DNA from: Gekko japonicus
Taxonomy: Eukaryota
Length of the DNA: 64,000 nt
Assembly: GCF_001447785.1 (NCBI RefSeq)
Contig: NW_015161420.1
Coordinates: 117,730 to 181,729 of the forward strand
Direction: 5' to 3'
Both the position numbers and the translations under genes were made by a program. How positions within the stretch are numbered: position 1 is the first letter of the stretch; every line of letters begins with the position of its first letter. Positions 20,369 to 60,411 of this stretch are shown here, one piece after another. The notes below the pieces were generated by a model, which made no database searches, was not told the origin of the DNA, and saw only the letters and a program-made list of their open reading frames with translations.

Positions 20369-20544
20369 CTCTCGCCCTCTCGCTGCGTCTGTTCCTGTCG
20401 CCGCCTCTCTGGCCACCCGGCTGCTGCTTCTTTCCCTCCCGGCTTTTTGCGCTCTTCTTCCACGCGGTTCTTCTTCTTTTTCGTGCTTGAGTACCGCAAC
20501 TGCAGCGCAAGGTTGCGCTCTTTCCCCGGTCCAGCCCGCAGCCT

Positions 20545-20607
20545 ATGGCCCTGGAAGGCGCCGCTGCCTCCTGTATTTCTGCTGTAGGTTCCCACATCCC
20601 TCTTTAA
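20545..20607 (+). CDS. AUG uORF1, 20 codons (MALEGAAASCISAVGSHIPL*)
   Basis: Only ATG in exon 1 (cctATGg); TAA at 20605-20607, 2 nt before the uCC AUU. Translation not shown. Confidence 0.45.
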   Translation: MALEGAAASCISAVGSHIPL

Positions 20608-20609
20608 AA

Positions 20610-20663
20610 ATTCCGCCTAAAAAGAGAAGACGATTTACCAAATCTTTCGGGCCGTTGTCCCAC
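20610..20663 (+). CDS. AZIN1: AZIN1 uCC (AUU-initiated uORF), part 1: IPPKKRRRFTKSFGPLSH
   Basis: AAA-ATT-C start context; phase-0 splice to 34191 keeps the frame; matches the vertebrate AZIN1 uCC as I recall it. Confidence 0.9.
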
Positions 20664-21169
20664 GTGAGTACCCTTTTCATTATTTTTTTTTAAAAGATTG
20701 ATTGATTTCTGTTGGTGAGGATCTAATTGGGAAGGGGGCAAAGATCCCACCATTCAGCGCCGTGGATCGCCTCAGTCGCTCTAGAGGCCCCTTCCCAGAC
20801 ATTCAAAAGGAGCCCTTCGGCGCCGTTTGGAGTGGGTGATGGAAGGTGCAGGTGCCCTGGCCGTCTCCAGGCGCCGACATCAGGGCGGCGGGTACTGGGA
20901 GAGACGCCGTCTCAAAGCCGTGGGGCAACGCCGTGGAGAGTAGGAGCGCCACAAAGCTGTGCTTCGAGGAGCGCTCGATCCAGTTTGAAGGAGTTCAGAA
21001 GGTCTAGATCTACCGGATTCCTTTACACCCCCCTCTGGATATCGGGCGGGTAATGTGGGGAAGATGCTCATTGACAGAAACACCCCCCCCCCCAGGAGGT
21101 GTCTGTCGTTCTCCCGAGGGAGGAAAGCAGAAATGCCGACCTGGTGAAAGGCTGAGGGAGTCTCCAGGG

Positions 21170-21196
21170 CAGCAGCAGCAGCAGCAGCAGCAGCAG
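21170..21196 (+). repeat. (CAG)9 microsatellite in intron 1
   Basis: Direct count. Confidence 0.95.
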
Positions 21197-21430
21197 CCCT
21201 TCCGCCCGGTCCCTACAGCGGCGCTGCGGAACGCAGAATGGTGGCGCGGCGTGTGCTCGGCGGTGTCAGGCTCCCCTCAGCACCCATGGCCGCGGGTCCC
21301 TCCTCTCCTCTGAGCGGCCAAGGACGGGTCCTGAGCCTCCTCCCGAGCAGGTCCATGGGGGCGTGTGTGTGTGTGTCTGCGGGTGAGGCAAGAAAAAGGG
21401 GCAGGAGGGGGGGGTAGGCGCTTCGGTTCT

Positions 21431-21622
21431 AACATGGCGGACGCTCGCGTGTGCGAGGAAAGGGGGCTGCCGTGACGAGAGGCCGGCGCTTCTGCCCCTT
21501 CGTGTGTTTGATACATTGGGGGGGGGGACGGATATATGGGTGGGGGGATGGAGGGGGGAAGAGCCAAGCGCTTCCCAGGGAGAGCATGGCGGAGGGGCTC
21601 GGCGTCTGCTCCAACATGGCGG
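21431..21622 (+). promoter_or_regulatory. Cluster of three YY1-type motifs (A[A/G]CATGGCGG)
   Basis: At 21431-21440, 21583-21592 and 21613-21622, all in the same orientation inside the CpG island. Confidence 0.55.
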
Positions 21623-22374
21623 ATTCCTGAGGAGGGGAGTGGGAGGCCGCCGCCGCCGCCGCCTGGGTGGCTGTCTCAGAACTGGGTCAGTTAGCAGCGA
21701 TAAGCCGTGAGAAGCCGCGGCAGTTAACGCGCAGTCGTTGAGAGCGGCGAGGGAGGGAGGGAGGGAGATGTGTGGCGAGCGGAAGGGCGGCAGTTTGTGG
21801 GGGAGGTGGGGAAAGCCCCCTTGACCTGTCTGGGGAGGAGCGTAGGTGGGGTGGGGTGGGGGATCTCCTTTTGATCCCATGGGGGAAATAGTCCTCCTCC
21901 CTACTGGAAGCCATCTCAGTGTCCCCCCTGACACTTGTCAGTCGCCAGCCTCGAGGGGGAAGGGCGTGTGGCAGCCGGGTCTTCCCTGGTTTCTCTTCAC
22001 CCCAGTAAGGGAAGTCTCCCTAGAGTTTGGGGAGACATGGCTCTGGGCACAGCCAGGCCTAGGATTCTGGCTGTGAGAGAGAGGAGGAGTATGGGTGACA
22101 TGTCAGAGAAGGCAGCGGCTCTCTTCCCAGGCTCCCCTCCCCTTGAGTGTGGGTGGGGTGGGGGGTAGAATTGTGTTGCCTGGTGCTCTCAAAGGGCTGT
22201 CCCTTCCCAAGAGGATTGGAGGCCTCTGAAGCTTATGTTTTGTATGTTGGGGAGGGGGGCAATGGCTCCAGCCAGGAATGGGTGATGGCTGTGCCATTTC
22301 CGTTTCCAGGTAACTCCTGTACTGAAACTGACTGGTATTGTAAAAACAACCACACACACATTCTGCTAAAAAAA

Positions 22375-22480
22375 AGGTCCAGTGGCACTTTAAAGACTAA
22401 AACACTTGTTTCAGTATAGGTTTTTGAGGGTCATACTGAAATAAATATTGTTTTTAAGGTGCCACTGGGCTTTTATTTTG
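22375..22480. mobile_element. Penelope-like terminal inverted-repeat remnant
   Basis: CCAGTGGCACTTTAAAGAC...TTTTTAAGGTGCCACTGG palindrome; same family as 48760-48917 and 52672-52800. Confidence 0.6.
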
Positions 22481-23082
22481 CTACAAAAGACTTGGCCGGT
22501 TTCAGGTTTTGCCAAGTAACATAGGAGGGACAGATGGCATCAGCAGAGGGAGTGGAAATGTGGGCCCAGGTTGCTTCACTTAGGAGAAACATGCCTGTCA
22601 TGGCTAACCGTGAAGATCCCGTACACGTTGGTTGTGCCAGAGAGTTCTTGATGATGAGGCTTGGCTACCTAAAGTGACAGCAGCTCAGCTCCCCCCCCCC
22701 CCCCAATCAAGTATATCATAAAAATTCATGCTTCTTTTCCCCTGATGTTTGGACTACACTTTAATAGTGTCATGTCAAGGAATGTAGTAAAGCAAGACCT
22801 CCTCTCCCTGTTTAATTACTTCAGTCTGCCTGGAGTGAGAAATCTATCTCCTTCCTGGTTGTGGGACACTTTCACAATATACACAATTTTAACTAACCAA
22901 AGTAAATACAGTCCCCTGGCTTGGTACAGGCAATCACCAGTGTAAGTCAGAATCTCTGCTTAGTTCCTAACCATGCTTCAAAGACTAAAGAAAATCCACC
23001 CTGATTGTGAATGACAGACTGGAGTAGGGGTCTAAAGCACGAAGCAACCAATCTGTTTTGGGATCTGAGTATGTGCTTGTGT

Positions 23083-23124
23083 ATCACTTCTCAGACTTTT
23101 GGCTAAGATTACGTGCAATATCTG
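23083..23124 (+). pseudogene. 3'-truncated (tailless) U2 snRNA retrocopy, U2 nt 1-42
   Basis: 35/42 identity to ATCGCTTCTCGGCCTTTTGGCTAAGATCAAGTGTAGTATCTG; 18-bp direct repeat ATCTGAGTATGTGCTTGT at 23063-23080 and 23120-23137. Confidence 0.85.
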
Positions 23125-25659
23125 AGTATGTGCTTGTAGACTAGTTTGTCTCCTCTTATCTGTTGCCAGGTTTGGGCCGCTCCTTATGTCAAGCCCCTCT
23201 GGATTGCCAGTCTTGAGAAGGAATTTTATGGTAACTTGATTGCTTTAGTCACAGTGGTGACACTTAGAAAGTATAAGAAGTATTTGTGTGAGAGAGCTCA
23301 GGGGTTTGGTTAGAGGTGTGACATTTGTGGAGCCAGCTGGATTTCTGGTGGATAGTGTGGTTGTAGATCAAAGGGTAGCATATGGGGCAATGCAAATTCA
23401 AGTCCCCAGTTAGTGATGACATTCACTCATAGGCGTTAGAAAGTCCTTATTTCTCTAACCATGCCTACCTTAAAGGATTCAAAGAAGATAAAATGGGGGG
23501 GGGGAGCCCATGTTGCTTTGGGTAGGATACAAATGTGGGAAGAATGATAGAAGAGATAAAAGCAACAGTTTGGCTGTCAGATGCCACATATAAAAGATCA
23601 CACCCTTGACCATGTTACTGTGGAACAGTTGCCACCCCTTAGCTGAGTATTCATAATAATGTGGTTTAGAAACCCTGTTTCCCTCCAGCATTAATTAAGT
23701 TGATGGGAAATGCCACCTTTAGACATTCTTGGATCTCCTTGGTTGTGAATAGGACAGGTGTTTAAGGAATATTAGTTTAAAAAATATTGAGTATGTTTTG
23801 ATCTTATTTTATTCCCAAGTGAAATCACAAAGTAGCTTTTAACCCTCTTTAAGTACTTCTTGAGGGGGATGTACAGAGAAATCAGGGTTTAAGGAGGAGA
23901 CTGATGTAATCTTGAAGCAGAGAAGACTTTTAAAGATTGAATATGTGACTATTGTGTCTTCAAGACATCTATGTTGCATAGTGGTTTATTTAGATGACTG
24001 GGTAAGGCTTTGAGTCAGGTTGCATAACAGGAAGGAAAGGGGTTTTTTGAACTGTTGGTCTTCAATATTTTGGCGCCAGTAAGAAACTGAAGGAAGTACA
24101 ATTCTCCCCCCATTGGGCCTGACTCTAGCGCTCTTCAGGGTCCCGGATGGAGAAGAAATGCAGATTATGCTGTCATTTGTGAGATCAGGTTTGCTGAGGC
24201 ACGGACACTTGGCCCTATCATGACGCCCTGTTCCGAGTGAAAACAGAGACTGGTGGTTTCCAAGCGTATTGTCATGGTGGCAGCCGAAATTGAGCTTATG
24301 TTCCGATCATCCCCAATGCCCCTATATGTGTGTGCAGGTCACCAGCTGCTGTTCTTGCCTGGGGCAGAGAAAAGAGCTCCCCTTCACTTCAGCCCTGTGG
24401 GTGGCAGCATCTTAATGGAGTTTTGTATTGAATAATGGTGGTGGAAGAGGAGGGAGGGAGGGTCTGTTCCAGTCTGGACTGGTCCTGTCTAGTTCTTTCC
24501 TTCCTGCCACGGTGTGAACAATGCTGCTGTTGCTGCCGCGGCTTGCGACAGGCATCCCCCACCCCATGCGTCTCTCTGAGTGTGGCGAGCGCATGCAACG
24601 CCAGCCTCCCTTCCCCTCCCCTGTCTGCCCGGTTACAGTGTGGTAAAAAAGTGCTACTCTCTCATCCACAGCAGGCGCTTGTCTCCTCTGCCTTTTGGGC
24701 AGCCGGTAGTGCTGAGCTGCTCTTAACAGCCGCCAGCAGAATTGGTGTGCGTGTGTGTGAAAGATGGGGGAAGGCAGGAGAGAGCTGAGACTGCTCCTTA
24801 AATGAGCTAGGGGGGCCTTGTTAGTGGCACACAATGGATACATTTCTATTCTTTGAGATTCAGGTCTGCTGTTCAAAGAAGCTGCACAAATGATTGGCTC
24901 CTCTGCTTGGTTGGTGTCTGATCCAAAGGGAATGTTGAATTCTAAGCGCTTTCAATCCCTAAAGGTTATTTTTGATGGCTAGTAAGAAACTGCCATGTTA
25001 AACATGGCTTGAGATGAAGGAGTTTACATTTGTATTTTCTCCCTTCCCCCTCTTCTTATGAAATCAGTTTAATTGCATATAAAGTAACCTTGGTGTTAGC
25101 AACAATGGCTTCTGGAGCTGAAAGGAGGAAAGCTTTAACTAGGAGAGCAGACAGTGTCTGGGATAAAGGGATAGTGTTTTTTGTGTGATTTTTTTTTTAC
25201 ACATGTTCTGGAATTTGACATGGTTGGTAGGTGGGTTAAACCTACTGCCACTCCGCCTGTCTGTTTCATGACACAATAAAGTTTCAGATACTTTGCTCAC
25301 AAATTATAGATTAATTAATGTTTATTTTCTTCAACTTGTTGAGACTTTGCCATAAAAATAGAACACCTGAGCTGTTCTGCCTGCACAAGAGGATGTTGTA
25401 ATTTAATTTGTGGACTGTGATGAATTTGTGTCAAACGGCAATCATACTTGAACAGCTGGAATGTAGATCTTATGGTGCACTTTGAAGTGTGCATTTATTT
25501 AAGTGGTACATACTGGGTCAAAAGACTACTATTTCCATTACATTTCCTTCTCTGGCATGAAAAGGAAGGTTTCTTGAAAAATGTTTACTTAAGTTACAGA
25601 ACTACAGTGGGAGCTCATGTTTTAGTTGATTACTTTCTGTACAGAGGACGGCGGAAAAC

Positions 25660-25733
25660 AGGAGGGCCTGGCAAGATATTCTCCATGGGGTCGCAAAGAG
25701 TCGGACTCGACTGTGCGACTGAACAACAACAAC
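25660..25733 (+). mobile_element. RTE/Bov-B LINE 3' end
   Basis: GGAGGGCCTGGC...CCATGGGGTCGCAAAGAGTCGGACTCGACTGTGCGACTGAAC(AAC)n; a second copy lies on the minus strand at 61647-61716. Confidence 0.8.
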
Positions 25734-26093
25734 ATATATGTACAATCTGTCTTTGAATGCTTATTCAGGAGTCCAAATTTTATTGAGTTAATTGGGGCTT
25801 ATTCCCAGTCAAGTATAAACAGTATATTCTTGGTGAATATAGTTCTGCAAGACAGAAGTTTTGGCTACATAATAAAAATATTTACCTGTTGTATTATGTT
25901 AAAAGAGTTGAGTTTTCCACTGGCTCCTACTCTTCTTTGTGTCCTAGTGGGGTGTGCATGCGTGCAAAGAATGGCCTTTCATCTGTGAATTTAGAAAATG
26001 TAATGTTTTCTTGATAACAAAATGGCATAGAGTCTTCTAAACTCTTCTAAAATGTTACTGTCAGTTGTTAAGCATTGTTTTTAATACATTAAG

Positions 26094-26442
26094 GTAAAAG
26101 GTAAAGGTTCCCTTGCTCGAAAGCCAGTCGAATCCAACTCTAGGGTTGCGGTGCTCATCTCCGTTTCAAAGCCGAAGAGCCAGCGCTGTCCGAAGACGTT
26201 TCTGTGGTCATGTGGCCGGCATGACTAAACACCAAGGCGCACAGAACGCTGTTACCTTCCCACCGAAGTGGTACCTATTTATCTACTTGCAATTTCTTGC
26301 TTTCGAACTGCTAGGTTGGCAGGAGCTGGAACTAGAGACAGGAGCTCACCCTGTCTTGCGGCACCCGGGTCTTGAACCGCTGAACTACTGACCTTCCACA
26401 GCCTGCAGTTCAGCGTCTTAACCACTTGAGCCACCGCAGCTC
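26094..26442 (-). mobile_element. Full-length Sauria SINE in AZIN1 intron 1
   Basis: Closely similar to 18544-18891; 15-bp TSD TTTTAATACATTAAG (26079-26093, 26443-26457). Confidence 0.9.
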
Positions 26443-27419
26443 TTTTAATACATTAAGAACTAATAAAATTTTATTTTACTTCACTTGGTATTTGTATATT
26501 TGCATGATAGTGCCAGTTCAATAAATGGCTAGTAATCTAGAATTCAAGTACTATTTGAATATGAAAATGATGGCTATTTATGTATGATATAGCTCCTACA
26601 AATAAGAGGCACTTATTAAAAATAAAAAGTCCTTGCCCAAAGCACATATAGGTTGGATGGGGACTATATATTAATAATTCCAAGAAATATTAGTGTTGCA
26701 GTTGCCCTCTGCCCCTATAGATGTGAAATTTTTGAACATTTTGAAGACATGGAAAAATTGATTCTTTGAGATTCAGAAATTTTAGAAAAATGGAAATACA
26801 TGTTATATTTAACAAGGCTACTGCTTCTTTACTTCTTTAATTACCTACTGCTTCTTTACTGCTTTAACTACATAAATGCATAGTATATAACTTGGCCAAT
26901 AAATATGCCAAATAGTACAATTTTATGGAACGTAAAAGTATACATGAGTTGCAGTCCAGTCTTAACCAAGACTGCAACCTTTTAAAACTATGGATTTATA
27001 GTGGTGTAATTACACTGTTTTCTATAGGCAAAGCTGCAAATATATCCTGTGCGAGGGGGAAAAATAGAAAATACAGATTTTGTAGTAAAGAAAAAATTAC
27101 TTGGACAGAAATAGTTTCATATAGTCAAATAGGGCTAGCAGCATATTTGGATATAGTTCTACTTTATAATTTAGAAAATGCTGAACTATTCAGTAGTGTG
27201 TTATAATCTAAAGTTTATTAATTGTGGAAAGAATGCTTGAAAATTATTATGCTTGTCTGCAGCATACACTGGAGTTACCATTATCTAATGTTTATTCTTA
27301 CACCAAAAATCACACATTTTGACTAAAACATTACCTTAAACCTTTTGCTCATTACAAAAGGGAAAGTATTCCACAGGGTTTTTTGTTTTACTGGACCTTT
27401 GCATCATCATCATCTTCCC

Positions 27420-27615
27420 CCAGTAGCACATACTTTGCATGCAGAAGGTCCCAGGTATAATTTTTGGCATCTGCAGTGAATAATATCCTTGGCAACAGGT
27501 GCTGGGAAAGCCATCCTCCTGAGGTTTTGGAGACCAGTTGCCAGGAAGAGTAGGGAGTACTATTAGGTAAGATGGACCATTGGTCTGACTTGGTTTATAC
27601 CAAACAGCATCACAT
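27420..27615 (+). mobile_element. Squam2-like SINE, diverged
   Basis: CTTTGCATGCAGAAGGTCCCAGG...GATGGACCATTGGTCTGAC, similar to the 5058 and 9884 copies. Confidence 0.55.
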
Positions 27616-27999
27616 AGTGGTTGCAGCTGTCTGCACCTTGTTCTCACACAGTCCAAGTGGGTGTGGCAGAAGCAAGATAAGAGACAGCAAGAGGTGAAGT
27701 GCTAAACTCTGAGATTAGCACACACACACACCCACCTGCACTCCCTTTATATAGCTTTGGATCTTTCCAGATCCACTTACAGGTCTTAAAGGCACTGTTT
27801 TACAAAAAATCCCCAAAAACTTTAAAGGAAAACTCCAGTGTAAAAGTGCTGAATTACAATTTGTCGACTTTTGACATAGCTCTCTGTAACTCAGCCCCAT
27901 GAGAGGCTGGAAGCTTTAATCTCTCTCATCATTAGGTATAAAAAACGCTTCTGTTCCAATCCTTTATACATGAATTAATTTGGAATAGTTTACTATGAA

Positions 28000-30400
28000 G
28001 ACGTTAGGTTTGACTCAGGAAAACTTATGGTGAAATAAACTGGGTAGGTCTTCAAGGTGCCACTTGATTTCTGGTTTATTTGGCCACCCAGCCATTGCAT
28101 AGCCGTAAAGCCCAGGCATCTAAAGCCAAGGTTAAGTCTTGCCTAAGGCCATCCTGAGAGCAGGAAACCCAACACCCACTAGGTGCAGAGCCAGTAGGAA
28201 CAGTTCAGTTTCACTATCATAGTTGGAAGTTTCTGATTTGGGCTTGGTAAAGATTTAGAGGAATCACCACAGGTGTAATCCCAGTCTAAACCCAATGGGA
28301 CCAAACAAGTGTTCCTCACACTGAAAGCTATGGAGAAGATAGTTCCATTCCCTGAGTTCTCTTAATCCCTAATGAAAGAGGAATGGACAAAGCCTTTATC
28401 AAATTATTTAGGGCTAGGCTTCTGTGCTTTACCTAAGGCTGTCCTTGGTCAGATGCCAGTTGTGGATGCTCTAGTAGTATCTTGGTCTCAGGGCAGTGAT
28501 GCCTAAGGATTGGGTCTAGAGCAGTCTGCACTCATGAACCAAAATCAGTTTTCCCAAGGGAAGATTTTTTTTGGCTGATTCTCAAGTTCTGGTGATCAGA
28601 GATGTGAGCCTTGTAGGCTGCAGTGCCCATTGCCAAAGGAGTCTCTTCATGGAGTCTATAGTCTGCAAAAGAAAGCAGCACTCGTCAGGTTGTCTGTAAT
28701 ACACTTAATTCCTGGTTTATGGCATCTACAGATTTTGTGAAGGACAGACATACTGTTGCAAAGGCTCAAGTCAATTAACAGGGCAGATCTAGGTGCAGGT
28801 CTGTACAGCTGCCAATCTGATAGAATGGGTGAAAACATCTGTACTAAAATGACTGGAAACACATCTGTACAGTGTGCACAACATTCAAATGGAACTGGTT
28901 GAGTCACAACCATGTTAACTAAGTGGAATGATCTCTGAAATGGCTATCTACCTGCTGACCAGAAATACCAGAGATGGACACCTCCATACAAGATCACAGT
29001 GGACAGATTTTTTCACTAGGTACATGTGCTCAGGAATGGAGCAAGTAGATGCCCTGATGCTCCTTGGCCACAGGGACTTCTTTCTACTTTCCATCCAGTT
29101 CCACTTATTCCTCATTCAGTCAGGAAACTTGAACTGGAAAGAGCTTGTGTAGTTTGTGTGGCCTTTTATTATGGCTAGGATGTGATTCTACTCAGCTGGC
29201 ATCCCCCACAAAGTGTTCTTGGAGGTGGGTTTCCCTGTTATGCCCGTCTGCTGTCCAGATTTCCAATACAGCAAACTGAAGTGGTACTCCAGGGATTCAC
29301 TTCCTCTTTGAGTCACTGTGGGAAGTACTTTTGATGAGTCTGATGTTGAAAATGCTTTCTGTGGTGGCATAATCGGGCCCTACAGCAGTGATACACAATG
29401 GCTCAAGAGCTGTATGTGGCTCTTTGGCATGTTACCTGTGGCTCTTCCCCATAGGATACCCATCCTATGTTCTAGGAAAGTGAGCAAGGTCATTTCCACC
29501 TAGGCAATCTCACTCTGTTGCCTGACCTATTATGTCTCATGCTGAGGGAAGGCAGAGAGGGAAGGTTCAAGGGTGGTAGAAAGAGACAACCCTACGTGTG
29601 CACTGTGCAGAGGTATTCCAGTAACTTAAAATGTTAGTTACATATATTAATAACTATCTTGTGTGTGTTTGGTGGGGTGGCACACAAGAGCATGAAATAG
29701 TTTTATGGTAGCAGGTAACTGCAAATGTGGTTCTCTACGAGTTGCAGAGCGAGTACCATTGCCCTAGAGAGTCAGATCTGGAGCTTTTCCCAAACATCCT
29801 GGGCTGCGCATATTTCACAGAAATGAAGTGGCCCTCCAAAACTTTCTCATCCCACCCAAATGGACAGTGGGTGTTTCATTCCAGACAGGAACTTTCCTGT
29901 CCTTCTTTTGTCCTAAGCCTCTACATCCTCTGGAGAAGGAGTGGCATATTGTTGTGTGCTCATAGATTTCTTAAAATTCATACCAGCAGAACTGCAGCCA
30001 TCAGAATATTTTTATGCTCTTCTGTCTGATGAACTGAGGCAAGAAGGGCTCTAAGTCATAATTGATTAGGTGCTTAAAGAATTGTATGTCATTAACCTGC
30101 TCTGTGCAAGGTAAGCAAACATCCATGTGCATTGCAGCACAGTCTGTTAGATGTGAAGTTATTTCAGCAGCCTTCAGCGCTTGCACTCCTATTGAAGAGG
30201 TATGTAAGGCAATGACATCACCTTGAATGTTAAAAAGTGTCACAAAGTGGATACTCTCAGCTTGGCTAATATGGTGGTCAGGTGTAGGTTGCTCAAGGAG
30301 GTCAATTAACAAAACATTCCGGCATGTGGGTATAGCTAGGGAGTCCCATTCAGATGAGATGTCCAGTAACAATATCTAGCGATCAGGATGCTGTTCTACT
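28000..30400. mobile_element. Highly decayed DIRS-like remnant(s)
   Basis: Minus-strand ...KCITDNLTSAAFF resembles the DIRS RNase H TDNxxA motif; ...HTSSIGVQALKAA loosely resembles the YR HSxR box; diverged inverted similarity between ~29636-29740 and ~31940-32060. Confidence 0.3.
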
Positions 30401-30854
30401 CTGAGTGAGAGAACACTAAACATACGTTAGTGTTCCCTCTACTTAGAAGTAATGAGAATATCCTGCCCTTCCATGCCCTACCCCTCTGTTCTTTAGCACC
30501 ATGTTAAACAACCAATGTCAGTCTCTCAGGTTTCAGAAAGGCATATGGCTTGCTGATAAAAGTAGATTTACCAAGCAGCTTTAAACCCCTCTGCAGCACA
30601 GTAAATTTTAAAAAGTATAAATGAATCAAACTCAAAGCATTTATGGTTGTATTTACCAGAATATAATGTCTTTCCTTTGAGTCAGTATTTCTTGAAGGTA
30701 GTTCATTTCCAACAGCCAGAAGTTGGAAATGGAGAGGTTCATACTCTCTGCATTCTTCCTAGCCCCCATACTGGAATGGTTTTATGTAGCTTAGCTTAAC
30801 ATCTTCTCATTTGGAACTTAACACCAGGTCTCTTGGGAAATATTACACCATGTA

Positions 30855-31790
30855 CATTTTATTTTAGATTTCAGAACAGAAAAGGAAGATGTCAATAATA
30901 CATAAAACCATTCTTACAAACAAAACACTATTTAGGTGAGACACACTCTGATGAAAAAATAAAAGAAAATGAGATACAAGAATTCTGTGAACCTAAAAGG
31001 GAATACACGTAAATGTAACACTCAAAACAATAGATTTATAGAAGTCTAAAGGAACTATTATAAATCCAAACAAGTGAAAACTCCCCACAAAGTTGATTAA
31101 AATATAGAAATAAATTTATACTGGTCTGGAATAGGTAAATATGAAGCATTTTCACTCATCGTGTACACTAAAAAGGTAACAATTTTTCCATAATAGTAGT
31201 TTAATGGTAACACGTATCAAAGGAAGAGATTTGCTAAGAAATATTATCCATTATAGTCCCAGATTTTCCTGTGCCAAAGCGTTATAGTTGGCGGATTTTT
31301 ATTCTTTCAGTGAGAAGCTATTAATGCCTTTGCCACTACAAGTAAGATTGCAATTAAATTCTTCCGCACCGGTAGAATCTCCCAATCTTCCAATTTTTTT
31401 TAGAAGTATTGCTTCTGGACTTGAGGGTGGTTTATAGCCTGTGATTAATTCAATATGGCCTAAAATGTTATCCCAATAAGTTGCTATTAAGGGACACTTC
31501 CACCAACAGTGAATAAAACTACCAGGTTTTCTGCACCCTTTCTAGCAAAGTATTACTGTTCTGAAGCTTTAATGTAGTATAGCTTTAACAGCATTAGGTA
31601 CCATCGTGTCAAAATTTTGAGAGAGTAATTTAAAATTAATAACATTTGACTGAAGTATATAAAATTGCCAAATTTCTCCCCAATTTTTCCCCAATGTTGT
31701 GGGGTAGAGATAGAACTAAGTCTAGATCTCCATTTTTAATAATTATGTCTAACTCATTAATTTTAATCTAAACTTGTTCCTGATAAACTT
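30855..31790 (-). mobile_element. L1 ORF2 3' fragment
   Basis: Minus strand encodes a degenerate C-terminal zinc knuckle (C*KGCRKPGSFIHCWWKCP) followed by an A-rich tail. Confidence 0.7.
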
Positions 31791-33689
31791 GAGATAGTAA
31801 ACATTAAGTATGTTCTACAGTTTTCACATCCTAGCTTTCTTTTTGGTAGTATCTGGTTTGCAGAATGCTGGGCTTACTGAACTTCTCTATCACTCATGCA
31901 GTCAGTCCCCCTAGAACACACCAGAACAGTAGCATTCACTGTGTAGCTCATTAGCAATCACCTGCCGCTAAAAGAGCCACATGCCTGTTGTATGCCCAGT
32001 GTGCCACCCCAAACACACACACAGTGATGTAACTATTAGTATTAAACATGTAGCTGTAACTATGTATCTGGAATGAGGGGAAGGGCTTCTTTTTCTACCT
32101 CCTTACTCTCCAGCATGAGGCACAGCAGCCCAGGCAAAATAATGTGGTTGCCATGTCACAGGGAGGAGGGCTAGCTGGCTGTGGAAAATGGGGAAGCAAC
32201 ATCCCACCCCCCATGTCCAGTTTCCTATCCTCCTGACAGTTGTAGAGAAGAGTGGGGCAACTGAAGAGGATGGACCCTTTACTTCCTACCAAGGCCTCCT
32301 ACTTAAGGAGGAGGAGTCTCACATCTTACTTTTCCTCTGATCTCTGTGGTGGTGACTGTTTAAAGTTGTGAACCACCTGTTTACCACAAGCTCTAGCAGG
32401 CAGTAGCCTTGCCCAGTTTCCTGAAACATGGGTTGAGTGCCACCTTGGGGAATGGTGCTCAGAAGAGCCCACAGGTGGCTCTTGAGCCATTGAGTGACTA
32501 TCACTGCATCAAACTTTTCCATGTAGTGGCACATTGCAGGATGGTCCCCAAGTCTTTCAGAAAAGCTTGTCTTCCATTTCTGTCTTCTCACTGAAGAGTC
32601 CTAGGTCTGTCTTGAACAGTAGTTCTCAAGCAGTAGTGTGTGTACCACTGGTGCAATGCAGAAGTAGTCCAGGACCTAAAACAGGGGGTTTCATAACAAT
32701 GACCAAGAATTGATTTCCCCCTCTATTGACATGTCTGTTAGCAAGGGTGACACGCCATCTCCAGCTGACCTTGCCTGCCATGGACTATCCATCTGTGATT
32801 TTTGGCATTCTAGTAGTAACCTAAGACACCTGGTGCTTCTCCTAGTTCCCCTGCCCATCAGCAAGTGTCTTTGATGCACTGCTTCCTGTCAGCCCTGTCT
32901 GCGAAGGATTATCCTTTAATGCAAGAACATAAAAATTACTCCCAGCAATACTATTGCAATTCTTTTATGTCCTTGAAACTTACCATATATGATAAATAAA
33001 CAGAATCACTGAAAGCATGTGTACATCCTTCTAGGGAAAAGTGGGCTTTTTGTTTCTATCATGGTGGGACCCAGGTTTTTTTATAGGGTGGTTGGTGGGA
33101 CATTAGATAAGGAAAGGTTGAGAACCACTGGTCTAGAACATGGTTTGAAAATAACTTACTTTGGCTAATACTTGATAATGTAAAGGTCTTGCCCTTAAAA
33201 CTTGGTTGCTCAAGTCTTTCAAGCACAGCTTTTTCCAGACTGTGTTAATACTGAAACAGCTATTGCTTGGGATGCAACCATGATGATCTACTGTACATGG
33301 AATATGTGACATTTGCGTAGGTCTTGCTTGGTGCATTTTGAACTGGCTCCCTCTTCAAAATGTCTTCGAATACGAAGTATCTTTTTCTTGTATTCCCTGA
33401 ATCAACATTCTCAAAGTTTAAAGAGTTTTTTTAATGTGCATAGTTTCTGAAAATTGTACTTGTCTTGTTACAAAAATTCGCTTGTTAACATGAATACTGA
33501 ACACTATAACATTCAAGAGCATATTGTGATGTGGATAATCTTGTTCTTGTGAACATGGAAGTGAGCTTTGAATTGTCTCCAACACCCATGCCCTCATAGC
33601 AGCCTGCATATCCCATGGAAGATGCTTTCTTCAGAAATGTGCATTGGGGCAGAAAAGATTGCTGCTAGGAGAACAAGAAATTGTATGTG

Positions 33690-33945
33690 CTACGAGACCA
33701 GAGGTCCATCAGTGGCTATTAGCCACAAGGTATAGATAGGAACTCTCAGTCTGGGGCAAGTGATGCACTGTATTCTTGGTGCTTGGGGGGGCTACAGTGG
33801 GAGGGCTTCTAGTATTCTGGCCCCACTGATTGACCTCTTGATGACACCTGGTATTTTTGGCCACTGTGACAGAGTGTTGGACTGGATAGGCAATTGACCT
33901 CATCCAACATTGGTTTCTCTTATGTTCTTATGTTTGTTCTTATGA
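33690..33945 (+). mobile_element. CR1-related 3' fragment with (TTCTTATG)n tail
   Basis: GGCCACTGTGACAGAGTGTTGGACTGGAT...CTCTTATGTTCTTATG; a similar piece lies at ~40245-40316. Confidence 0.6.
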
Positions 33946-34190
33946 GAGTGACTATAAACTGAATAAGGAATATGGCTAAATTTCAGTTCAGTGAACTAAA
34001 TGTATCTTTTGCTGAAGGACAGGTCTTGGGCAACTGATGTTGAGTGTTTGTAGCTTGTAAATGTACAGCCCCCCTTTAAAACCTGAATTTATGTACCATG
34101 GTGCACATATTTGGAGGCAACGTTATGTGGGCTGGATTTTCTTCCAGCTGTTGCATGCACTAAATAGTTGCATATGTATTTTCTCTGCAG

Positions 34191-34295
34191 GGCAAACTCT
34201 CTGACCAGGTTTACAACTATCCAGAGGGTTTAGGAGAAGTGCTTTATCGAGAACAGTTCGACTTCAACGCTGAGCCACCTTGGGAACCTAGCTGA
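34191..34295 (+). CDS. AZIN1: AZIN1 uCC, part 2: GKLSDQVYNYPEGLGEVLYREQFDFNAEPPWEPS* (52 aa in total)
   Basis: In frame with the exon 1 part; PPW at 34275-34283; PS-stop at 34287-34295. Confidence 0.92.
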   Translation, partial: GKLSDQVYNYPEGLGEVLYREQFDFNAEPPWEPS

Positions 34296-34328
34296 TGATA
34301 GTAGGGTTCCATCTCCTAACTTGTCCAT
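34191..34328 (+). other. AZIN1: AZIN1 exon 2 (5' leader)
   Basis: Acceptor TTTTCTCTGCAG|G, donor CAT|GTAAGT. Confidence 0.9.
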
Positions 34329-40300: not shown

Positions 40301-40493
40301 CTCTTCTTCTGTTCTTAAGCCTGTTTTACCACATCTGCTGGCAAAATAACACTGCTAGTTTATCTGTACTTTTGGTAGGCTTCTGCGTTGTGGGTGACTG
40401 AGAAAAACTTCTTGGCCAATGCTCTTCTGCAGTGTTTATAGCAACTGAGGTTTTAATTATCTCTTCTGTCAAACAGTTTGTTGCATAATTTAA
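34295..40493 (+). CDS. Spliced AUG uORF2, 16 codons (MIVGFHLLTCPFCCII*), exon 2 34295-34328 + exon 3 40477-40493
   Basis: ATG overlaps the uCC stop (TGATG); TAA at 40491-40493. Confidence 0.55.
34720..36330 (-). mobile_element. L1/Tx1-type ORF2 fragment, decayed
   Basis: ORF 35783-36043 contains IFKFIWQEKLSWVASKLMYRKPVEGELGVPHIKLHYKA, matching the FIWxxKxxRI...GGLGxP..YY motif; poly-A (read as T on the minus strand)/A-rich end near 34727. Confidence 0.7.
39045..39180 (+). mobile_element. CR1 LINE 3' end
   Basis: GCAGGGGGTTGGACTAGATGACCCTGGAGGTCCCTTCCAACTC followed by (ATGATTCT)n. Confidence 0.85.
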
Positions 40494-40541
40494 GGACCCG
40501 GCTCTAAGGCTTTGCAGCCCGTCCCTTGTGTTTCTTGGTTT

Positions 40542-40571
40542 ATGACTGTCGGCTTTGCGGAATACGGCTGA
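40542..40571 (+). CDS. AUG uORF3, 9 codons (MTVGFAEYG*)
   Basis: tttATGa (weak context); TGA at 40569-40571, 1 nt before the main ATG. Confidence 0.55.
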
Positions 40572-40572
40572 G

Positions 40573-40674
40573 ATGAAAGGATTTCTTGAGGATGCAAACT
40601 ACTCCATTGGCTTATTGGATGAAGGAGTGAATCTTGGAGATGTCATTGACAACTGCATTTATGAGCATACTCTT
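40573..40674 (+). CDS. AZIN1: AZIN1 coding exon 1 (exon 3 starts at 40477)
   Basis: [34 protein letters not shown]; donor GTAAGT; acceptor AAACAG at 40476. Confidence 0.95.
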
Positions 40675-52600: not shown

Positions 52601-54804
52601 GTGAAGCAAGCAATTCAGGATTTTTTCAGGTGGGTAGATGTGTTGGTCTGAAGTAACAGAGCGAGATTTTTGAGTCCATTAGCACCTTAAAGACTTCTAG
52701 AGTATAAGCTTTTCTGAGTTAAAACTTATCTGAATTTTTATTCTGGAAAACATATACCCTGGCAGTCTTGTTAGTCTCTAAGGTGCTAGTGGACTGGAAT
52801 CTTCCAGTTCATAAATTGTGGCTTAAAGTAAATAATTTTTCATTTCTCTAGTAGCACTCCTAAACCTAAATCTAATCGCTAGAACTGTTCTTTATGCAGA
52901 AATACAAGGAAGATGAGCCTCTGTTTGCAAGCAGCCTTTGGGGTCCATCCTGTGATGAGCTTGATCAAATTGTAGAAAACTGTCTTCTCCCTGAGCTGAA
53001 TATTGGAGATTGGCTACTCTTTGACAATATGGGATCTGGTACCTTGGGTGAACAGTCTGCTTTCAATGACTTACAAAGGCCACCAGTTTATTACATAATG
53101 TCATTCGGTGACTGGTAAGTTTGCATTATTTTGTACTTGGGCATGTCTTAAAGCACATGAGCAGGCTGTCTACTAAGTTGCTTTCAGCAGGCTGCCCCAC
53201 AGTCAGAACATAATTTTAATGAGCCTTGTAAGTCTATATTTAAAATATATTTGGCGTAAGCTTAGGCTATGGGGAGTTGTCCACGTGCCAGAAGGAGGAG
53301 TGCTGGCAATGCATCAGTTCTTTTCTCTTTCGCTTGGGCAGAATTCTAAACTTTGCCCGGAAGGCCAGTATGCGCAGATGTCTAAATCTAGAGGCTGGCT
53401 TGCTCCGGGCAGTCCTGTCATAAAAAGCGGCAGTACTTGGTTGCACATGCTGCTTTCCTGACCTTTAACAACTCGTGCACAAGACCACAATAGTGGAAGA
53501 ATTACTGGTCACTTTGCTTGAACCAAGTTGTCACTTGGCCAGGGCATATAACTACTTGCTATGTAAAACTGTTCATAAAATTAATGAGCATGTGGATCTT
53601 TGCTGTTTAGTGGGAAAACCACACTGATCTGAATGTGTAGATTGGTCACTGCTGAGTGGTGCCTCAGCATAAGTCTGTATTATTATTATTATTAGTAGTA
53701 GTAGGTGTGTGTGTGTGTCTGGAGGGTCATGGTTGACTTCAGGCAATCCCTAATGGGTTGGACATTCAGAGAGTTCACTTGCTATTGCCTGCCCCTGCGT
53801 CCTGACCCTAGTATTCCTTGGAGGTCTCCCTTCCAATTACTTGCCAGGGTTGGCCCTGCTTAGCTTCCCAGATCTGACAAGATCGGGCTTCTCTGGGCTA
53901 TCCAGGTCAGGGCCCTCAGCATATGTCTGGTAATGAATAGATGCTTGCGTTGCTGACTAGAAGTGTGTGTCTGTGCACACGCTCTCCCAAGTAATCATTG
54001 TTTTCTTACTTTCCAAATCTTGTTTGGATTTTTTATTGCATCAGTTACTTGGTTTAAGTGGGAAATGCTTCTTGGCTGTAATATTTTCACCCCATTGAAC
54101 GTACAGTGAAATCCTCTGTGACTGCATCCCTTGCTCAAGGAAATTCCAGATAAGAGGAGGTTATCTCTGTTTTAACACCATACAGTTTTCGACTTGCAGA
54201 GCAGGTTTATATAGAAAAGCTGAACCTTGCCCTCCTCCCCCCACTTTTCCTAGTGCTTGAAGCACTTTAATGCAGAAGTGAACGTGGGAGGAAAATCCAC
54301 AAGGGTAAGGGGCAAGAAAGGAATAGGTTTTAGCTCCCTTTGTTCACAAGATTCAGCTCCTGTTTAATAATGGCCTCCTGTCTATTAGGGTGTTTAAAAC
54401 TTCTTATGGAAGTTAACAAAACTTCCAACTTCTTGCAAAATCCCTACCCTGTATTCCAGGCTTCCTTTGGACTGTAATAGAAGAGCTATATGGAACCTGT
54501 ATTTAATTAAATGTGGCTAACACAGATTTGATTGCAGGAATTGGGTTGCAAATTTCAGATTAGCATGGGAAGGCATGAATGACTGCATTTGCTTGAACAT
54601 CAGGAAATACGATTAAATGTTAAAATGTTTTATTATTCTGCTGTATTCTGGTGTGTGGCTAAACTGTTGTGCGTTTTGTTTTTTCCACTCAGGTGTGAGA
54701 TGCAAGATGCTGGCTTTACCTCTGACACACTGATGAAGAATTTCTTCTTTGTGCCTTCTTGCATTCAGCTGAGCCCTGAAGACAGATTTTCTATTGAAGC
54801 TTAA
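40573..54804 (+). CDS. AZIN1: Antizyme inhibitor 1, 447 aa, 10 coding exons
   Basis: join(40573-40674,40909-41082,41747-41919,43777-43908,45387-45468,45813-45887,49995-50160,52402-52514,52900-53114,54693-54804) = 1344 nt, all GT-AG, frame open. [18 protein letters not shown]...PFYNVKCN...WGPSCDELD...EDRFSIEA* is an ODC fold with AZIN1-type substitutions. Confidence 0.97.
40909..41082 (+). CDS. AZIN1: AZIN1 coding exon 2
   Basis: [13 protein letters not shown]...[30 protein letters not shown]; TTGTAG / GTGAGT. Confidence 0.95.
41747..41919 (+). CDS. AZIN1: AZIN1 coding exon 3
   Basis: [10 protein letters not shown]...[17 protein letters not shown]...[12 protein letters not shown]; TTTCAG / GTAAGT. 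Confidence 0.95.
43777..43908 (+). CDS. AZIN1: AZIN1 coding exon 4
   Basis: [43 protein letters not shown]; TCTTAG / GTGAGT. Confidence 0.95.
45387..45468 (+). CDS. AZIN1: AZIN1 coding exon 5
   Basis: [27 protein letters not shown]; TTTCAG / GTAAGT. Confidence 0.95.
45813..45887 (+). CDS. AZIN1: AZIN1 coding exon 6
   Basis: [25 protein letters not shown]; TTTTAG / GTATAA. Confidence 0.93.
46180..46960 (-). mobile_element. Decayed L2-type LINE (resumes after 47880)
   Basis: ORF 46637-46864 contains ...[13 protein letters not shown]..., a degenerate SRLDYC region; similar to 10581-11285. Confidence 0.55.
46966..47870 (+). mobile_element. 5'-truncated LINE (ORF2 C-terminus with CCHC zinc knuckle; RTE-X-like, clade uncertain) nested in the L2 copy
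   Basis: ORF 47180-47692 ...[26 protein letters not shown]...HILLRCPHY; AATAAA at ~47842; (GA)n tail; 9-bp TSD GACTAACAT (46957-46965, 47871-47879). Confidence 0.8.
48727..48917. mobile_element. Penelope-like terminal inverted-repeat remnant forming a ~70-bp stem
   Basis: AGAACAAAGTTTGAATCCAGTGGCACCTTTAAGACCAACAAAGTTTTATTCAAGGT... pairs with ...ACCTTGAATAAAACTTTGCTGGTCTCAAAGGTGCTACTGGACTCAAACTTTGTTCT. Confidence 0.75.
49995..50160 (+). CDS. AZIN1: AZIN1 coding exon 7
   Basis: [44 protein letters not shown]...; TTCTAG / GTAAGC. Confidence 0.95.
50470..52000 (-). mobile_element. ORF1-only L1-derived element (HAL1-like), 1531 bp, TSD-flanked
   Basis: Starts GGGGAGCGGGGC; disrupted ORF1 51886->50938 (...LHLKFRGF..., [32 protein letters not shown]); AATAAA at 50504-50499; (CAA)n tail; 12-bp TSD GGCTTCACTGTT (50458-50469, 52001-52012). 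Confidence 0.85.
52402..52514 (+). CDS. AZIN1: AZIN1 coding exon 8
   Basis: [37 protein letters not shown]; TAACAG / GTGAGA. Confidence 0.95.
52625..52800. mobile_element. Penelope-like inverted-repeat remnant, diverged
   Basis: TTCAGGTGGGTAGA start shared with 48727; arms AGTCCATTAGCACCTTAAAGACT / AGTCTCTAAGGTGCTAGTGGACT. Confidence 0.65.
52900..53114 (+). CDS. AZIN1: AZIN1 coding exon 9 (exon 11)
   Basis: [45 protein letters not shown]...; ATGCAG / GTAAGT. Confidence 0.96.
53705..53915 (-). mobile_element. 5S rRNA-derived SINE
   Basis: GGAGGTCTCCCTTCCAATTACT...CCCTGCTTAGCTTCCCAGATCTGACAAGATCGGGC is the reverse of a 5S-like head; (TG)n tail. Confidence 0.7.
54693..54804 (+). CDS. AZIN1: AZIN1 last coding exon (exon 12)
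   Basis: [36 protein letters not shown]; acceptor TTTTCCACTCAG. Confidence 0.96.
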
Positions 54805-57981: not shown

Positions 57982-60411
57982 TTCTCCCTCTGAGGTGGAG
58001 GATATCTTGTGGGTGATTCCCATCCATCACTTAGGGAGGCAGTCCTAATTTCAATTACTTCCTGTTTCCTGTAGTGGGAGTCACCCTAGGCTCAGTTCTT
58101 TTCCTGCCTCAGAAGGTTTTGGAGGTTGAGGATTGCCGGGCTGGTTGCTCTCTTAATGGGAGGGGGATCTCACAGACCGCCTTCCATGTCATTAAGAGAG
58201 GATACCAATGGATTTCTCTCCACTCCAGAGATAGAGGCTGTGGTGGTGGCCGATGCTCAACCAGCAGAGCAGCATTTACAGAGCCCGTGGCAGCCTCACC
58301 GGCCATTTTGGAGTCCACTGGCCACTCTATGCTTTAAAACAGGAATAGCGAGCAGAGCCTAATCCTGCACATGGCACACACCGAGACCTATGGTTCAAGG
58401 TGGTTCATCGAGCTAGGCATGATTGTGCCGATAATGCTCAAGGGGACGAGGAAGATGACGAGTTGCAGAGCGGTAATGTTAGCAGTCCCCGGTCTGTCCC
58501 CTTATTTCCAAATGTAATGGTCGCCTTTATAAGAGGCATGGGGGAGGAAATAGTGCATTTCTGCAGATCATGGGGCTACTGTGTCCTTCCAACTGGACAG
58601 ATTTTACATCAGATATTTTCATCCCCAGGCGGAGGCCACGGATGCCCTTCTGTTCCCTTGGCCCGAGGGGCTCCTCTATACGTTTCCTCCTCTTCCTGTA
58701 CTTCCCAAGCTTCTCCGGAGGATACAAGTTCTAAGGGCAGAGATCATAGTGATGGCACCATACTGGCATCATCATCCTTGGTTCACGCCACTACCGAGGA
58801 ATGGTGATGACTCTAGCCATTCCTGTCTCAGAAGACATGCTGCTTCATGGTTCAGTTTGGCATCCCAGGCCCAGGTGGTTCTGCTTACCCGCATGGAGAT
58901 TGAAAGGGACAAGCTATCAAAACTAGGCTACAAAGAGCCAGTCATCAATATGATCATGGCCTCTAGAAGGCTGTCTACCCCAAGGATCTACAATACTACT
59001 TGGAAGGCCTTTGTCTGATGGGCTCAGTGGAAGGCTGACCCATTGCATCCAGAAATTAGATCACTACTGGAGTTCCTACAAGGACGGTCTTGTAAGCGGT
59101 CTCAGGGCAGTGACCCAAGAAACAGATGGTGGCCCTGGCTTTAGTCCTGCCCCGGTACAACTGTCTTAACATCCCTCAGCACTCTCACATTCACCATTTC
59201 CTCAGAGGGGCATTATTCAAGGATTCTCCACAGAGACATAGGTTTACAACTTGGAAGCTTAATACTGTTCTCACAGCTCTTACGAAGGAACCCTTTGAGC
59301 CGATGTAGCCATTCTGCTCAAATTCCCAAGGATGAAAACTTTGTTCCTGCTGGCCATTACTTCAGCCAGGAGGATTTCGGAACTAGGCACTCTGTCAATT
59401 CAGTTGGAGCTGTGTTTTTCACAAAGACAAGGTAGTTCTGAGAACAGATTCCACCTTTTTTGCCCAAAGGTCAATACTAAGTTTCACAGATCACAACAGA
59501 TTTGTTTGCCATCTTTTTCTCCAAATTCAACCTATCTGGAGGAAAAGGTTTGGCATACACTGGATGTGAGGAGAGTGCTCAAATGCTATATTCTCAGAAT
59601 AGCCTGCTTCAGACGGACAGAAAATATGTTTGTTAACATTTTTCCTCTTCACACAGGGAGAAAGATGTCTAACTCTGCCATAAGCAACACTATGAGGTCC
59701 TGCATTACTGTAGCCTACAGGAGTAGGAAACGAGTTCCTGCAGGTATCACGGCCCACTCTCTTCGCAGTGCTGCAACGAATATGGCCTTTGCCAACAGGG
59801 CATCGGTGGAGGAAGTCTGTAGGGCTGCTACGTGGTCTTTGTTATCCACATTCATCAGGCATTACAAGATATGTATGACTCTGCTGATGCAGCATTTGGA
59901 CGGAGAGTGCTGCAGTCTGTTCTGACTTTAGATGACGACCACCCCCCAAAAAATTAGGGACACTGCTCTGGGAGGTCCCACAAGATGTCCTCCACCTCAG
60001 AGGGAGAACGACCATTGGTTACTCACCATGAAGGGTCCTTCTCCTCTGAGGCTTGAAGGACATCTTGGCCCTCCCGGGTCATCATTTCCTCTATCTACTA
60101 TGCTGTTCTTTCACACTCTATTTAAAAATAATAATAAGATTATATGAGAGAGAGGACTCACCTTTTTCTTCCTGTTCCAATGTTTGTGATTTGGCTCTTG
60201 TTGATGTTCAAGTTCTCTTTTTTACAGTGGTTAAGTTAGTGTATTGCTTTTGGAGCACCAGAACTGAGCCTAGGGTGACTCCCACTACAGGAAACAGGAA
60301 GTAATTGAAATTAGTCCCGCCTCCCTAAGTGATGGATGGGAATGACCCACAAAATGTCCTCCAAGCCTCAGAGGAGAAGGACCCTTCACGGTGAGTAACC
60401 AATGGTCGTTC
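57982..60411 (+). mobile_element. DIRS1-type tyrosine-recombinase retrotransposon, internally deleted (2.43 kb)
   Basis: Inverted terminal repeats ~57985-58099 / 60260-60372; ICR 59977-60067; methyltransferase-like domain (PWPEGLLYTFPPLP...APYW...PWF); YR motifs AITSARRISEL, AHSLRS, AATWS..TFIRHY. Confidence 0.92.
58890..59925 (+). pseudogene. Disrupted tyrosine recombinase ORF of the DIRS element
   Basis: Catalytic R, HxxR, W and Y motifs in ORF 59332-59925; upstream part broken by stops and frameshifts (59018, 59308). Confidence 0.8.

What the first reader, a model, noticed from the sequence alone, without database searches (positions are those of the whole stretch)
20610..34295. Hidden AUU-initiated 52-codon uORF split by a 13.5-kb intron, ending in PPW-EPS-stop: a polyamine/eIF5A translational sensor
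Seen: ATT at 20610 (A at -3) reads IPPKKRRRFTKSFGPLSH to a GT donor at 20664. It continues in phase from the AG acceptor at 34190 as GKLSDQVYNYPEGLGEVLYREQFDFNAEPPWEPS*. The ORF track cannot show it because it is non-AUG and spliced. Established in mammals: high polyamines inhibit eIF5A, ribosomes pause at the uCC PPW motif, queued scanning subunits boost initiation at the weak AUU, and main-ORF translation is repressed. Inference: the full circuit is intact in this reptile. This is the central regulatory system of the window. It is known in mammals, and standard pipelines would likely miss it here.
Basis: partly seen in the sequence, partly recalled or inferred. Interest (0 to 1): 0.85.

Follow-up and report, generated by a model that had tools for sequence, protein, structure and literature searches.

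The report
Known AZIN1 polyamine-sensing upstream ORF
The split, AUU-started 52-codon upstream reading frame is real and is this gecko-like reptile's copy of the polyamine-sensing "uCC" already described in the antizyme inhibitor 1 (AZIN1) mRNA of all vertebrates, so it is a correct call of a known element, not a discovery.

Summary
ATT at 20610 has A at -3. Eighteen codons run to a GTGAGT donor at 20664. The frame resumes in phase 0 after the AG at 34189-34190 for 34 codons, ending PPW-EPS-TGA at 34295.

The gene downstream is AZIN1: main ATG 40573, stop 54801, with gecko AZIN1 proteins as the closest relatives.

The peptide is orthologous to the known vertebrate AZIN1 uCC:
- 51 of 52 residues match a spliced gene model of a crane.
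- The last 28 residues are identical in two rodents.
- Eel models keep the frame despite two single-codon indels.
- GP at residues 14-15 and PPW at 47-49 match the published mouse numbering.

Against an unidentified amniote contig, exon 2 differs at 5 bases: 4 synonymous, 1 Leu-to-Ile.

Support for the junction is indirect: orthologous spliced models, canonical sites, and 20 mostly RNA-sized runs that hold 20500-20663 in full.

The polyamine/eIF5A queuing mechanism is inferred from mouse work.

Verdict: interpretation supported, already known, low interest. Apart from notes on this same window, the scan had not recorded it elsewhere.

The parts
20610..20663 (+). uCC part 1: AUU start codon (20610-20612) plus 17 codons, at the end of 5' leader exon 1
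   Evidence: It is 18/18 identical to the crane (P0280) and wall-lizard (P0279) spliced models and 13/18 to the eel models.
20664..34190 (+). Intron of 13,527 nt that splits the uCC in phase 0 (GTGAGT donor, pyrimidine tract plus CAG acceptor)
   Evidence: The same ...PLSH|G... junction appears in spliced gene models P0279-P0282. It was not shown by reads in this species.
34191..34295 (+). uCC part 2: 34 codons plus the TGA stop
   Evidence: The last 28 residues are identical in two rodents, a crane and several unnamed vertebrate ORF calls. Against L001 there are 4 synonymous differences and 1 Leu-to-Ile difference.
34275..34283 (+). Pro-Pro-Trp codons (uCC residues 47-49), the pause site mapped in mouse
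   Evidence: PMC7397865 places the mouse PPW at uCC residues 47-49. These residues are invariant in alignment A2.
34293..34304 (+). Four in-frame stop codons in a row (TGA TGA TAG TAG)
   Evidence: They are identical in L001.
34191..34328 (+). 5' leader exon 2 (138 nt)
   Evidence: Alignment A3. Identity to L001 starts about 15 nt before the acceptor and ends about 10 nt after the donor; the flanks are at random level. The 34328^40477 junction is implied by the ...TCP|FCCI... read-through in models P0279 and P0281.
40477..40674 (+). Exon 3: 96 nt of leader, then the main AZIN1 ATG at 40573 and 34 codons
40573..54801 (+). AZIN1 coding region (10 tblastn-mapped coding pieces), the ORF that the uCC regulates
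   Evidence: AZIN1 structures 4zgz/3btn score 132 bits against 89 for ODC. Pfam PF02784 and PF00278; 87.6% identity to Paroedura picta AZIN1.
20545..20607 (+). AUG uORF of 20 codons in another frame. Its TAA ends 2 nt before the AUU and supplies the A at -3.
   Evidence: Read. This agrees with scan note s1-830980. Whether it lies inside the mRNA is only suggested.

Best explanation
This is the orthologue of the vertebrate AZIN1 upstream conserved coding region (uCC). It lies in the 5' leader of the AZIN1 mRNA of a gecko-like squamate and is split between leader exons 1 and 2.

The mechanism is inferred from mouse and human work:
- Most scanning 43S complexes pass the weak AUU and translate AZIN1.
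- When polyamines are high they interfere with eIF5A, and the few ribosomes translating the uCC stall at Pro-Pro-Trp near its end.
- Scanning and elongating ribosomes queue behind the stall, back to the AUU 46 codons upstream.
- The queue raises initiation at the AUU, and AZIN1 synthesis falls.
- Less AZIN1 frees antizyme, which lowers ODC activity and polyamine uptake and so closes the feedback loop.

Shown here: the sequence anatomy, the AZIN1 identity, the peptide orthology and a coding-type substitution pattern. Inferred: the splice in this species, AUU initiation, the pause and the polyamine response.
For: - Anatomy is exact.
- The gene is AZIN1.
- ORF calls and spliced gene models from other vertebrates carry the same peptide. 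The crane matches 51/52, the lizard exon-1 part 18/18, and rodents the last 28/28. Eels keep the frame from IPPKK to PPWDPS with two one-codon indels.
- In genomic ORF calls, similarity stops exactly at the codon read from the CAG acceptor.
- Exon 2 is sharply delimited by conservation against L001. Its 5 differences are 4 synonymous and 1 conservative (binomial P 0.0075).
- GP14-15 and PPW47-49 match the mouse numbering (PMC7397865).
- The literature states that all available vertebrate AZIN1 mRNAs have a uCC of about 50 codons. It has no in-frame AUG, a conserved AUU in Kozak context and a Pro-Ser end. AUU-to-UUU changes, or changes to the last 10 codons, abolish polyamine repression (PMC4458265, PMC2811004). 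The queuing model is described in PMC11058473 and PMC9082881.
- Window 20500-20663 is held in full (14/14 words) by 20 runs from 8 studies. One run is on record as RNA and most have RNA-sized contig sets.
Against:
- The runs are mostly only guessed to be RNA.
- The +4 base of the AUU is C, not G.
- 31 of 34 third codon positions and all 33 post-stop bases of exon 2 are identical to L001. Part of the conservation is therefore at nucleotide level and is not explained by the peptide.
- The comparison gene models are pipeline predictions that select for open frames.
- Neither primary paper (PNAS 2008, Mol Cell 2018) was held, so the mechanism is cited from secondary sources.
Confidence: 0.87

Rival explanations
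1. The conservation is a nucleotide-level property of a non-coding 5' leader exon, such as a splicing signal, an RNA structure or a protein or miRNA site. On this reading the open frame is incidental in this species.
For: Against L001, exon 2 is 133/138 identical. That includes 31/34 third positions, four tandem stops and all 33 post-stop bases. Bases just upstream of the AUU also read as conserved in frame (FPHPSLK in crane and lizard), with non-conservative changes in eels (P to H/Y, F to Y/H).
Against: - All differences inside the invariant 28-codon block are synonymous.
- Fish versions change E to D and EV to AA and carry whole-codon indels while keeping the frame and the same stop.
- The exon 2 fold is not better than shuffles (z -1.36), nor is the hairpin over the stops (z -0.36).
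- There is no Rfam match above noise.
- In mouse, shifting the frame of the last 10 codons abolishes regulation (PMC2811004).
Confidence: 0.05
2. The uCC tail in exon 2 is real, but in this species the main transcripts start at another first exon or splice differently. The ATT at 20610 would then not be the operative start and the 52-codon frame would not be assembled.
For: - The junction is unverified here.
- The GC-richest part of the CpG island (21-22 kb, GC 0.65) lies downstream of exon 1.
- Alternative start sites and 5' splice forms of Azin1 are reported in mice (PMC6313458, citing Murakami et al.).
- Two gene models (P0279, P0281) splice out most of the uCC tail.
Against: - The exon-1 peptide is 18/18 identical to crane and lizard, where it is modelled as joined to exon 2 at the same codon.
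- The donor is a consensus GTGAGT in phase 0.
- 20 runs hold 20500-20663 in full.
- Conservation of an AUU with no in-frame AUG would be unexplained if the exon were unused.
Confidence: 0.06

Closest known systems
Mouse/human AZIN1 uCC (Ivanov, Loughran and Atkins 2008, PNAS; Ivanov et al. 2018, Mol Cell; read here through PMC2811004, PMC4458265, PMC7397865, PMC11058473, PMC9082881)
   Same: - Same gene and same place in the 5' leader.
- About 50 codons (52 here).
- AUU start with a purine at -3 and no in-frame AUG.
- Gly-Pro at residues 14-15 and Pro-Pro-Trp at 47-49.
- Pro-Ser before the stop.
- The last 28 residues are identical to the rodent ORF calls P0275 and P0276.
   Different: Nothing structural was found. 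There are a few substitutions in residues 19-24: GKLSDQ here against GELSDR in rodents. Function is untested in any reptile. In this species an AUG uORF abuts the AUU; I could not check whether mammals share it.
uCCs of ODC homologues in invertebrates and fungi (PMC2811004)
   Same: An upstream conserved coding region with a non-AUG start (AUU, UUG or ACG). It has adjacent prolines near the C-terminus and, in animals, a Pro-Ser end. It gives polyamine-responsive repression of the main ORF.
   Different: These sit on ODC mRNAs, not AZIN1. Lengths range from 22 to 100 codons, there is little peptide similarity, and the review judges them to have arisen independently in several groups.
AMD1 (AdoMetDC) MAGDIS uORF and the antizyme +1 frameshift site
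   Same: These are also cis-acting polyamine sensors within mRNAs of the same pathway, and they act through ribosome behaviour at a specific peptide or codon context. This rests on general knowledge and PMC2811004.
   Different: The AMD1 uORF is AUG-started, six codons long, and stalls at termination. Antizyme uses frameshifting, not start-site selection through queuing.

Membership tests
Vertebrate AZIN1 uCC | Lies in the 5' leader of an AZIN1 mRNA, upstream of and separate from the main ORF | tested here: met
   AZIN1 is identified. The uCC stop is at 34295 and the main ATG at 40573. They are 129 nt apart in the inferred mature leader (33 nt of exon 2 plus 96 nt of exon 3).
Vertebrate AZIN1 uCC | About 50 codons with no in-frame AUG | tested here: met
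   There are 52 sense codons. The frame has no Met from 20331 to the stop.
Vertebrate AZIN1 uCC | [quoted passage not shown] | tested here: met
   ATT is at 20610 with A at -3; the +4 base is C. The Ile codon heads the conserved peptide in the crane, lizard and eel models. Actual initiation was not tested.
Vertebrate AZIN1 uCC | Conserved C-terminal block with Pro-Pro-Trp and a Pro-Ser-stop ending | tested here: met
   PPW is at 34275-34283 and PS-stop at 34287-34295. 26 of the 34 exon-2 columns are invariant across 11 sequences.
Vertebrate AZIN1 uCC | Coding-type conservation: synonymous changes, whole-codon indels and a preserved stop | tested here: met
   There are 4 synonymous differences and 1 Leu-to-Ile difference against L001 (P 0.0075). 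Fish versions carry two one-codon indels and keep the frame. This rests on one DNA comparison and a few peptides, not on a full dN/dS test.
Vertebrate AZIN1 uCC | The two halves are joined in the mature mRNA of this species | tested here: inconclusive
Indirect support comes from the same junction in models P0279-P0282, consensus splice sites in phase 0, and exon-1 words held by 20 runs.
Vertebrate AZIN1 uCC | Polyamine-dependent, eIF5A-linked pausing at PPW that raises AUU initiation and represses the main ORF | not testable with these tools
   This is known only from mouse and human experiments (PMC11058473, PMC9082881, PMC4458265).

The most novel reading that the evidence does not exclude
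Leader exon 2 carries a second, nucleotide-level function laid over the uCC. Its synonymous sites, four tandem stops and 33-nt post-stop tail are almost frozen between a gecko and a distant amniote. Gene models in a lizard and a moray eel splice out an 83-nt intra-exonic piece (34209-34291 here) that removes the PPW sensor while keeping the AUU. If that splice were real and regulated, it would switch polyamine sensing off at the RNA-processing level.
Probability: 0.1. Interest if true: 0.45.

Novelty: already known. Interest (0 to 1): 0.15.

Why it matters
It confirms that every sequence element needed for the AZIN1 polyamine feedback sensor is intact in a squamate reptile. These are the AUU start, the 46-codon spacing, PPW and the Pro-Ser-stop ending. 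It also shows the element split by a 13.5-kb intron, which explains why ORF finders and standard annotation miss it.

The practical value is for annotation. The uCC should be marked on AZIN1 leaders, and the 'hypothetical proteins' in several deposited genomes (crane, wall lizard, eels, voles) are mis-modelled uCCs. It adds no new biology beyond what was described for vertebrates in 2008-2018.

Tried and rejected
No transcript contigs or orthologous DNA could be fetched for the AZIN1 proteins found.
- The joined (spliced) uCC or AZIN1 sequence was never built or searched. Each exon was searched by reference on its own.

**Searches that found nothing useful**
- The primary papers were not held.
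- The search for related loci needed three attempts before an alignment query was accepted. It then returned one locus only.
- Pfam has no family for the uCC piece. Rfam gave only a noise hit (E 0.42).
- An RNA-structure explanation was rejected. The exon 2 fold has z -1.36 and the hairpin over the stops z -0.36.

**Handling of possibly human sequence**
- L001 is host DNA in a JGI metagenome contig from an unknown species. I do not take it for human. Its peptide variant (GKISDQ) is the crane's, whereas the rodent versions read GELSD, and no Alu core was found.
- The mammal-type ORF call P0272 is of unknown origin and could be human. I left it out of all alignments.
Full report
**Observation.**
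- ATT is at 20610, with A at -3 (20607) and C at +4.
- Eighteen codons run to 20663 and are followed by GTGAGT.
- A pyrimidine tract and CAG end at 34190.
- From 34191 there are 34 codons ending Pro-Pro-Trp (34275-34283), Glu-Pro-Ser and TGA (34293-34295).
- The first piece is 54 nt, so the intron (20664-34190, 13,527 nt) sits in phase 0. That let me handle the two pieces apart; the joined sequence was never built or searched.
- The frame has no ATG for 93 codons upstream of the ATT.
- An open 52-codon frame alone is not remarkable (about 0.08 per frame). The case rests on comparison with other species.

**What gene this is.** Stop-to-stop frames downstream on the + strand contain a full set of ODC-like exons.
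- One exon scores 132 bits against the solved antizyme inhibitor 1 structures (4zgz, 3btn), against 89 bits for ornithine decarboxylase.
- Pfam gives PF02784 and PF00278.
- tblastn of reptile AZIN1 proteins against the window maps ten coding pieces from the ATG at 40573 to the stop at 54801.
- The best identities are to geckos: Paroedura picta 87.6% and Eublepharis macularius 86.3%. The window therefore comes from a gecko-like squamate.
- A CpG island covers 20-22 kb, as expected for the promoter and first exon.

**Comparison with other species.** The exon-2 frame, searched alone, found nine short ORF calls.
- All end in the same 28 residues as the window (VYNYPEG...PPWEPS). Two are deposited as hypothetical proteins of rodents (Alexandromys fortis, Scotinomys teguina).
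- Fish-like versions end PPWDPS.
- In the genomic ORF calls, similarity stops exactly at the Gln read from the CAG acceptor, which marks the exon boundary.

- The crane Grus japonensis carries the whole uCC contiguously and matches 51 of 52 residues.
- Podarcis lilfordi matches 18 of 18 in the exon-1 part, with the same ...PLSH|G... junction.
- Two eels match 13 of 18 in exon 1. In Anguilla the frame is kept through to PPWDPS despite two one-codon insertions.
- In alignment A2, 26 of the 34 exon-2 columns are invariant.

**DNA-level check.** One metagenome contig holding host DNA (L001) carries exon 2 of an unidentified amniote.
- Its peptide variant is the crane's. No Alu core was found, and I do not take it for human.
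- MAFFT shows identity switching on about 15 nt before the acceptor and off about 10 nt after the donor. The flanks are at random level (32%).
- This fixes exon 2 at 34191-34328.
- There are five differences, all in the coding part: four synonymous and one Leu-to-Ile. Only 21% of possible single changes would be synonymous (binomial P 0.0075).
- That is a coding-type pattern, though from one comparison only.

**Fit to the published element.**
- PMC4458265 summarises Ivanov et al. 2008. All available vertebrate AZIN1 mRNAs have a uCC of about 50 codons, with no in-frame AUG and a conserved AUU. Changing AUU to UUU, or changing the last ten codons, abolishes polyamine repression.
- PMC2811004 adds that the AUU is absolutely conserved in a Kozak context and that animal uCCs end Pro-Ser.
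- PMC7397865 places the mouse PPW at uCC residues 47-49 and a strong disome site at Gly-Pro 14-15. The window has the same residues at the same numbers.
- PMC11058473 and PMC9082881 describe the mechanism. High polyamines interfere with eIF5A, ribosomes stall at PPW, a queue reaches back to the AUU and raises initiation there, and AZIN1 synthesis falls.
- The two primary papers were not held, so these points are cited second hand.

**What was not shown.** The 20663^34191 junction in this species' RNA was not shown.
- The remaining expression evidence is. All 14 sampled words of 20500-20663 are held by 20 runs from 8 studies. One run is on record as RNA, and most have contig sets of RNA-like size (29-182 million letters).
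- This suggests, but does not prove, that the AUU and the stretch upstream of it are transcribed.

**Remaining oddities.** Exon 2 is more conserved than the peptide requires.
- 31 of 34 third positions are identical to L001, as are the four tandem stops (TGA TGA TAG TAG, 34293-34304) and the 33-nt tail after the stop.
- Folding does not explain this: z is -1.36 for the exon and -0.36 for a hairpin over the stops. Rfam has nothing.
- Two gene models (Podarcis, Gymnothorax) splice out what would be 34209-34291 here. They read on through the exon-2 tail into exon 3 (LMIVGFHLLTCP, then FCCI).
- That read-through conveniently confirms the 34328^40477 junction.
- The 83-nt intron itself has weak signals and looks like a predictor's way round the stop codons. 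It was not tested.

**Verdict.** The element is the known vertebrate AZIN1 uCC, so it is already known and of low interest (0.15). It has some annotation value, because several genomes have deposited it as a 'hypothetical protein'. Apart from notes on this same window, the scan had no earlier record of it.

Noticed in passing
window 20545-20607: An AUG uORF of 20 codons in a different frame ends with TAA 2 nt before the AUU of the uCC; the last A of its stop is the -3 base of the AUU. The ATG seems to be kept in Podarcis lilfordi, because the in-frame reading AYGPG of model P0279 contains it. It may modulate how many subunits reach the AUU.
   Followed up: partly
window 40542-40571: A second AUG uORF of 9 codons (MTVGFAEYG, then a stop) lies in leader exon 3. 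It ends 1 nt before the main AZIN1 ATG at 40573.
   Followed up: no
window 34293-34328: Four in-frame stops in a row, plus the rest of exon 2 after the stop, are base-for-base identical to an unrelated amniote contig (L001). The peptide does not explain this constraint, and no significant RNA structure was found.
   Followed up: partly
window 34209-34291: Deposited gene models of Podarcis lilfordi (P0279) and Gymnothorax javanicus (P0281) remove the equivalent 83 nt, from CAG|GTTTAC to CCTAG|C. That deletes the PPW block. It is probably a prediction artefact, but an alternative splice was not excluded.
   Followed up: no
P0275, P0276, P0279-P0282 (public protein records): The AZIN1 uCC, or mis-spliced versions of it, is deposited as a 'hypothetical protein' with an invented upstream ATG in a vole, a singing mouse, a crane, a wall lizard and two eels.
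   Followed up: partly
window 21000-22000: The GC-richest part of the CpG island (GC 0.65) lies inside the 13.5-kb intron, downstream of exon 1. It could hold an alternative first exon of the kind reported for mouse Azin1.
   Followed up: no
window 59299-59922: A 208-codon open frame downstream of AZIN1 reads like a tyrosine-recombinase or integrase fragment of a DIRS- or Crypton-like mobile element (seen only in the frame listing). A run of 52 N near 60.9 kb is an assembly gap and was left alone.
   Followed up: no
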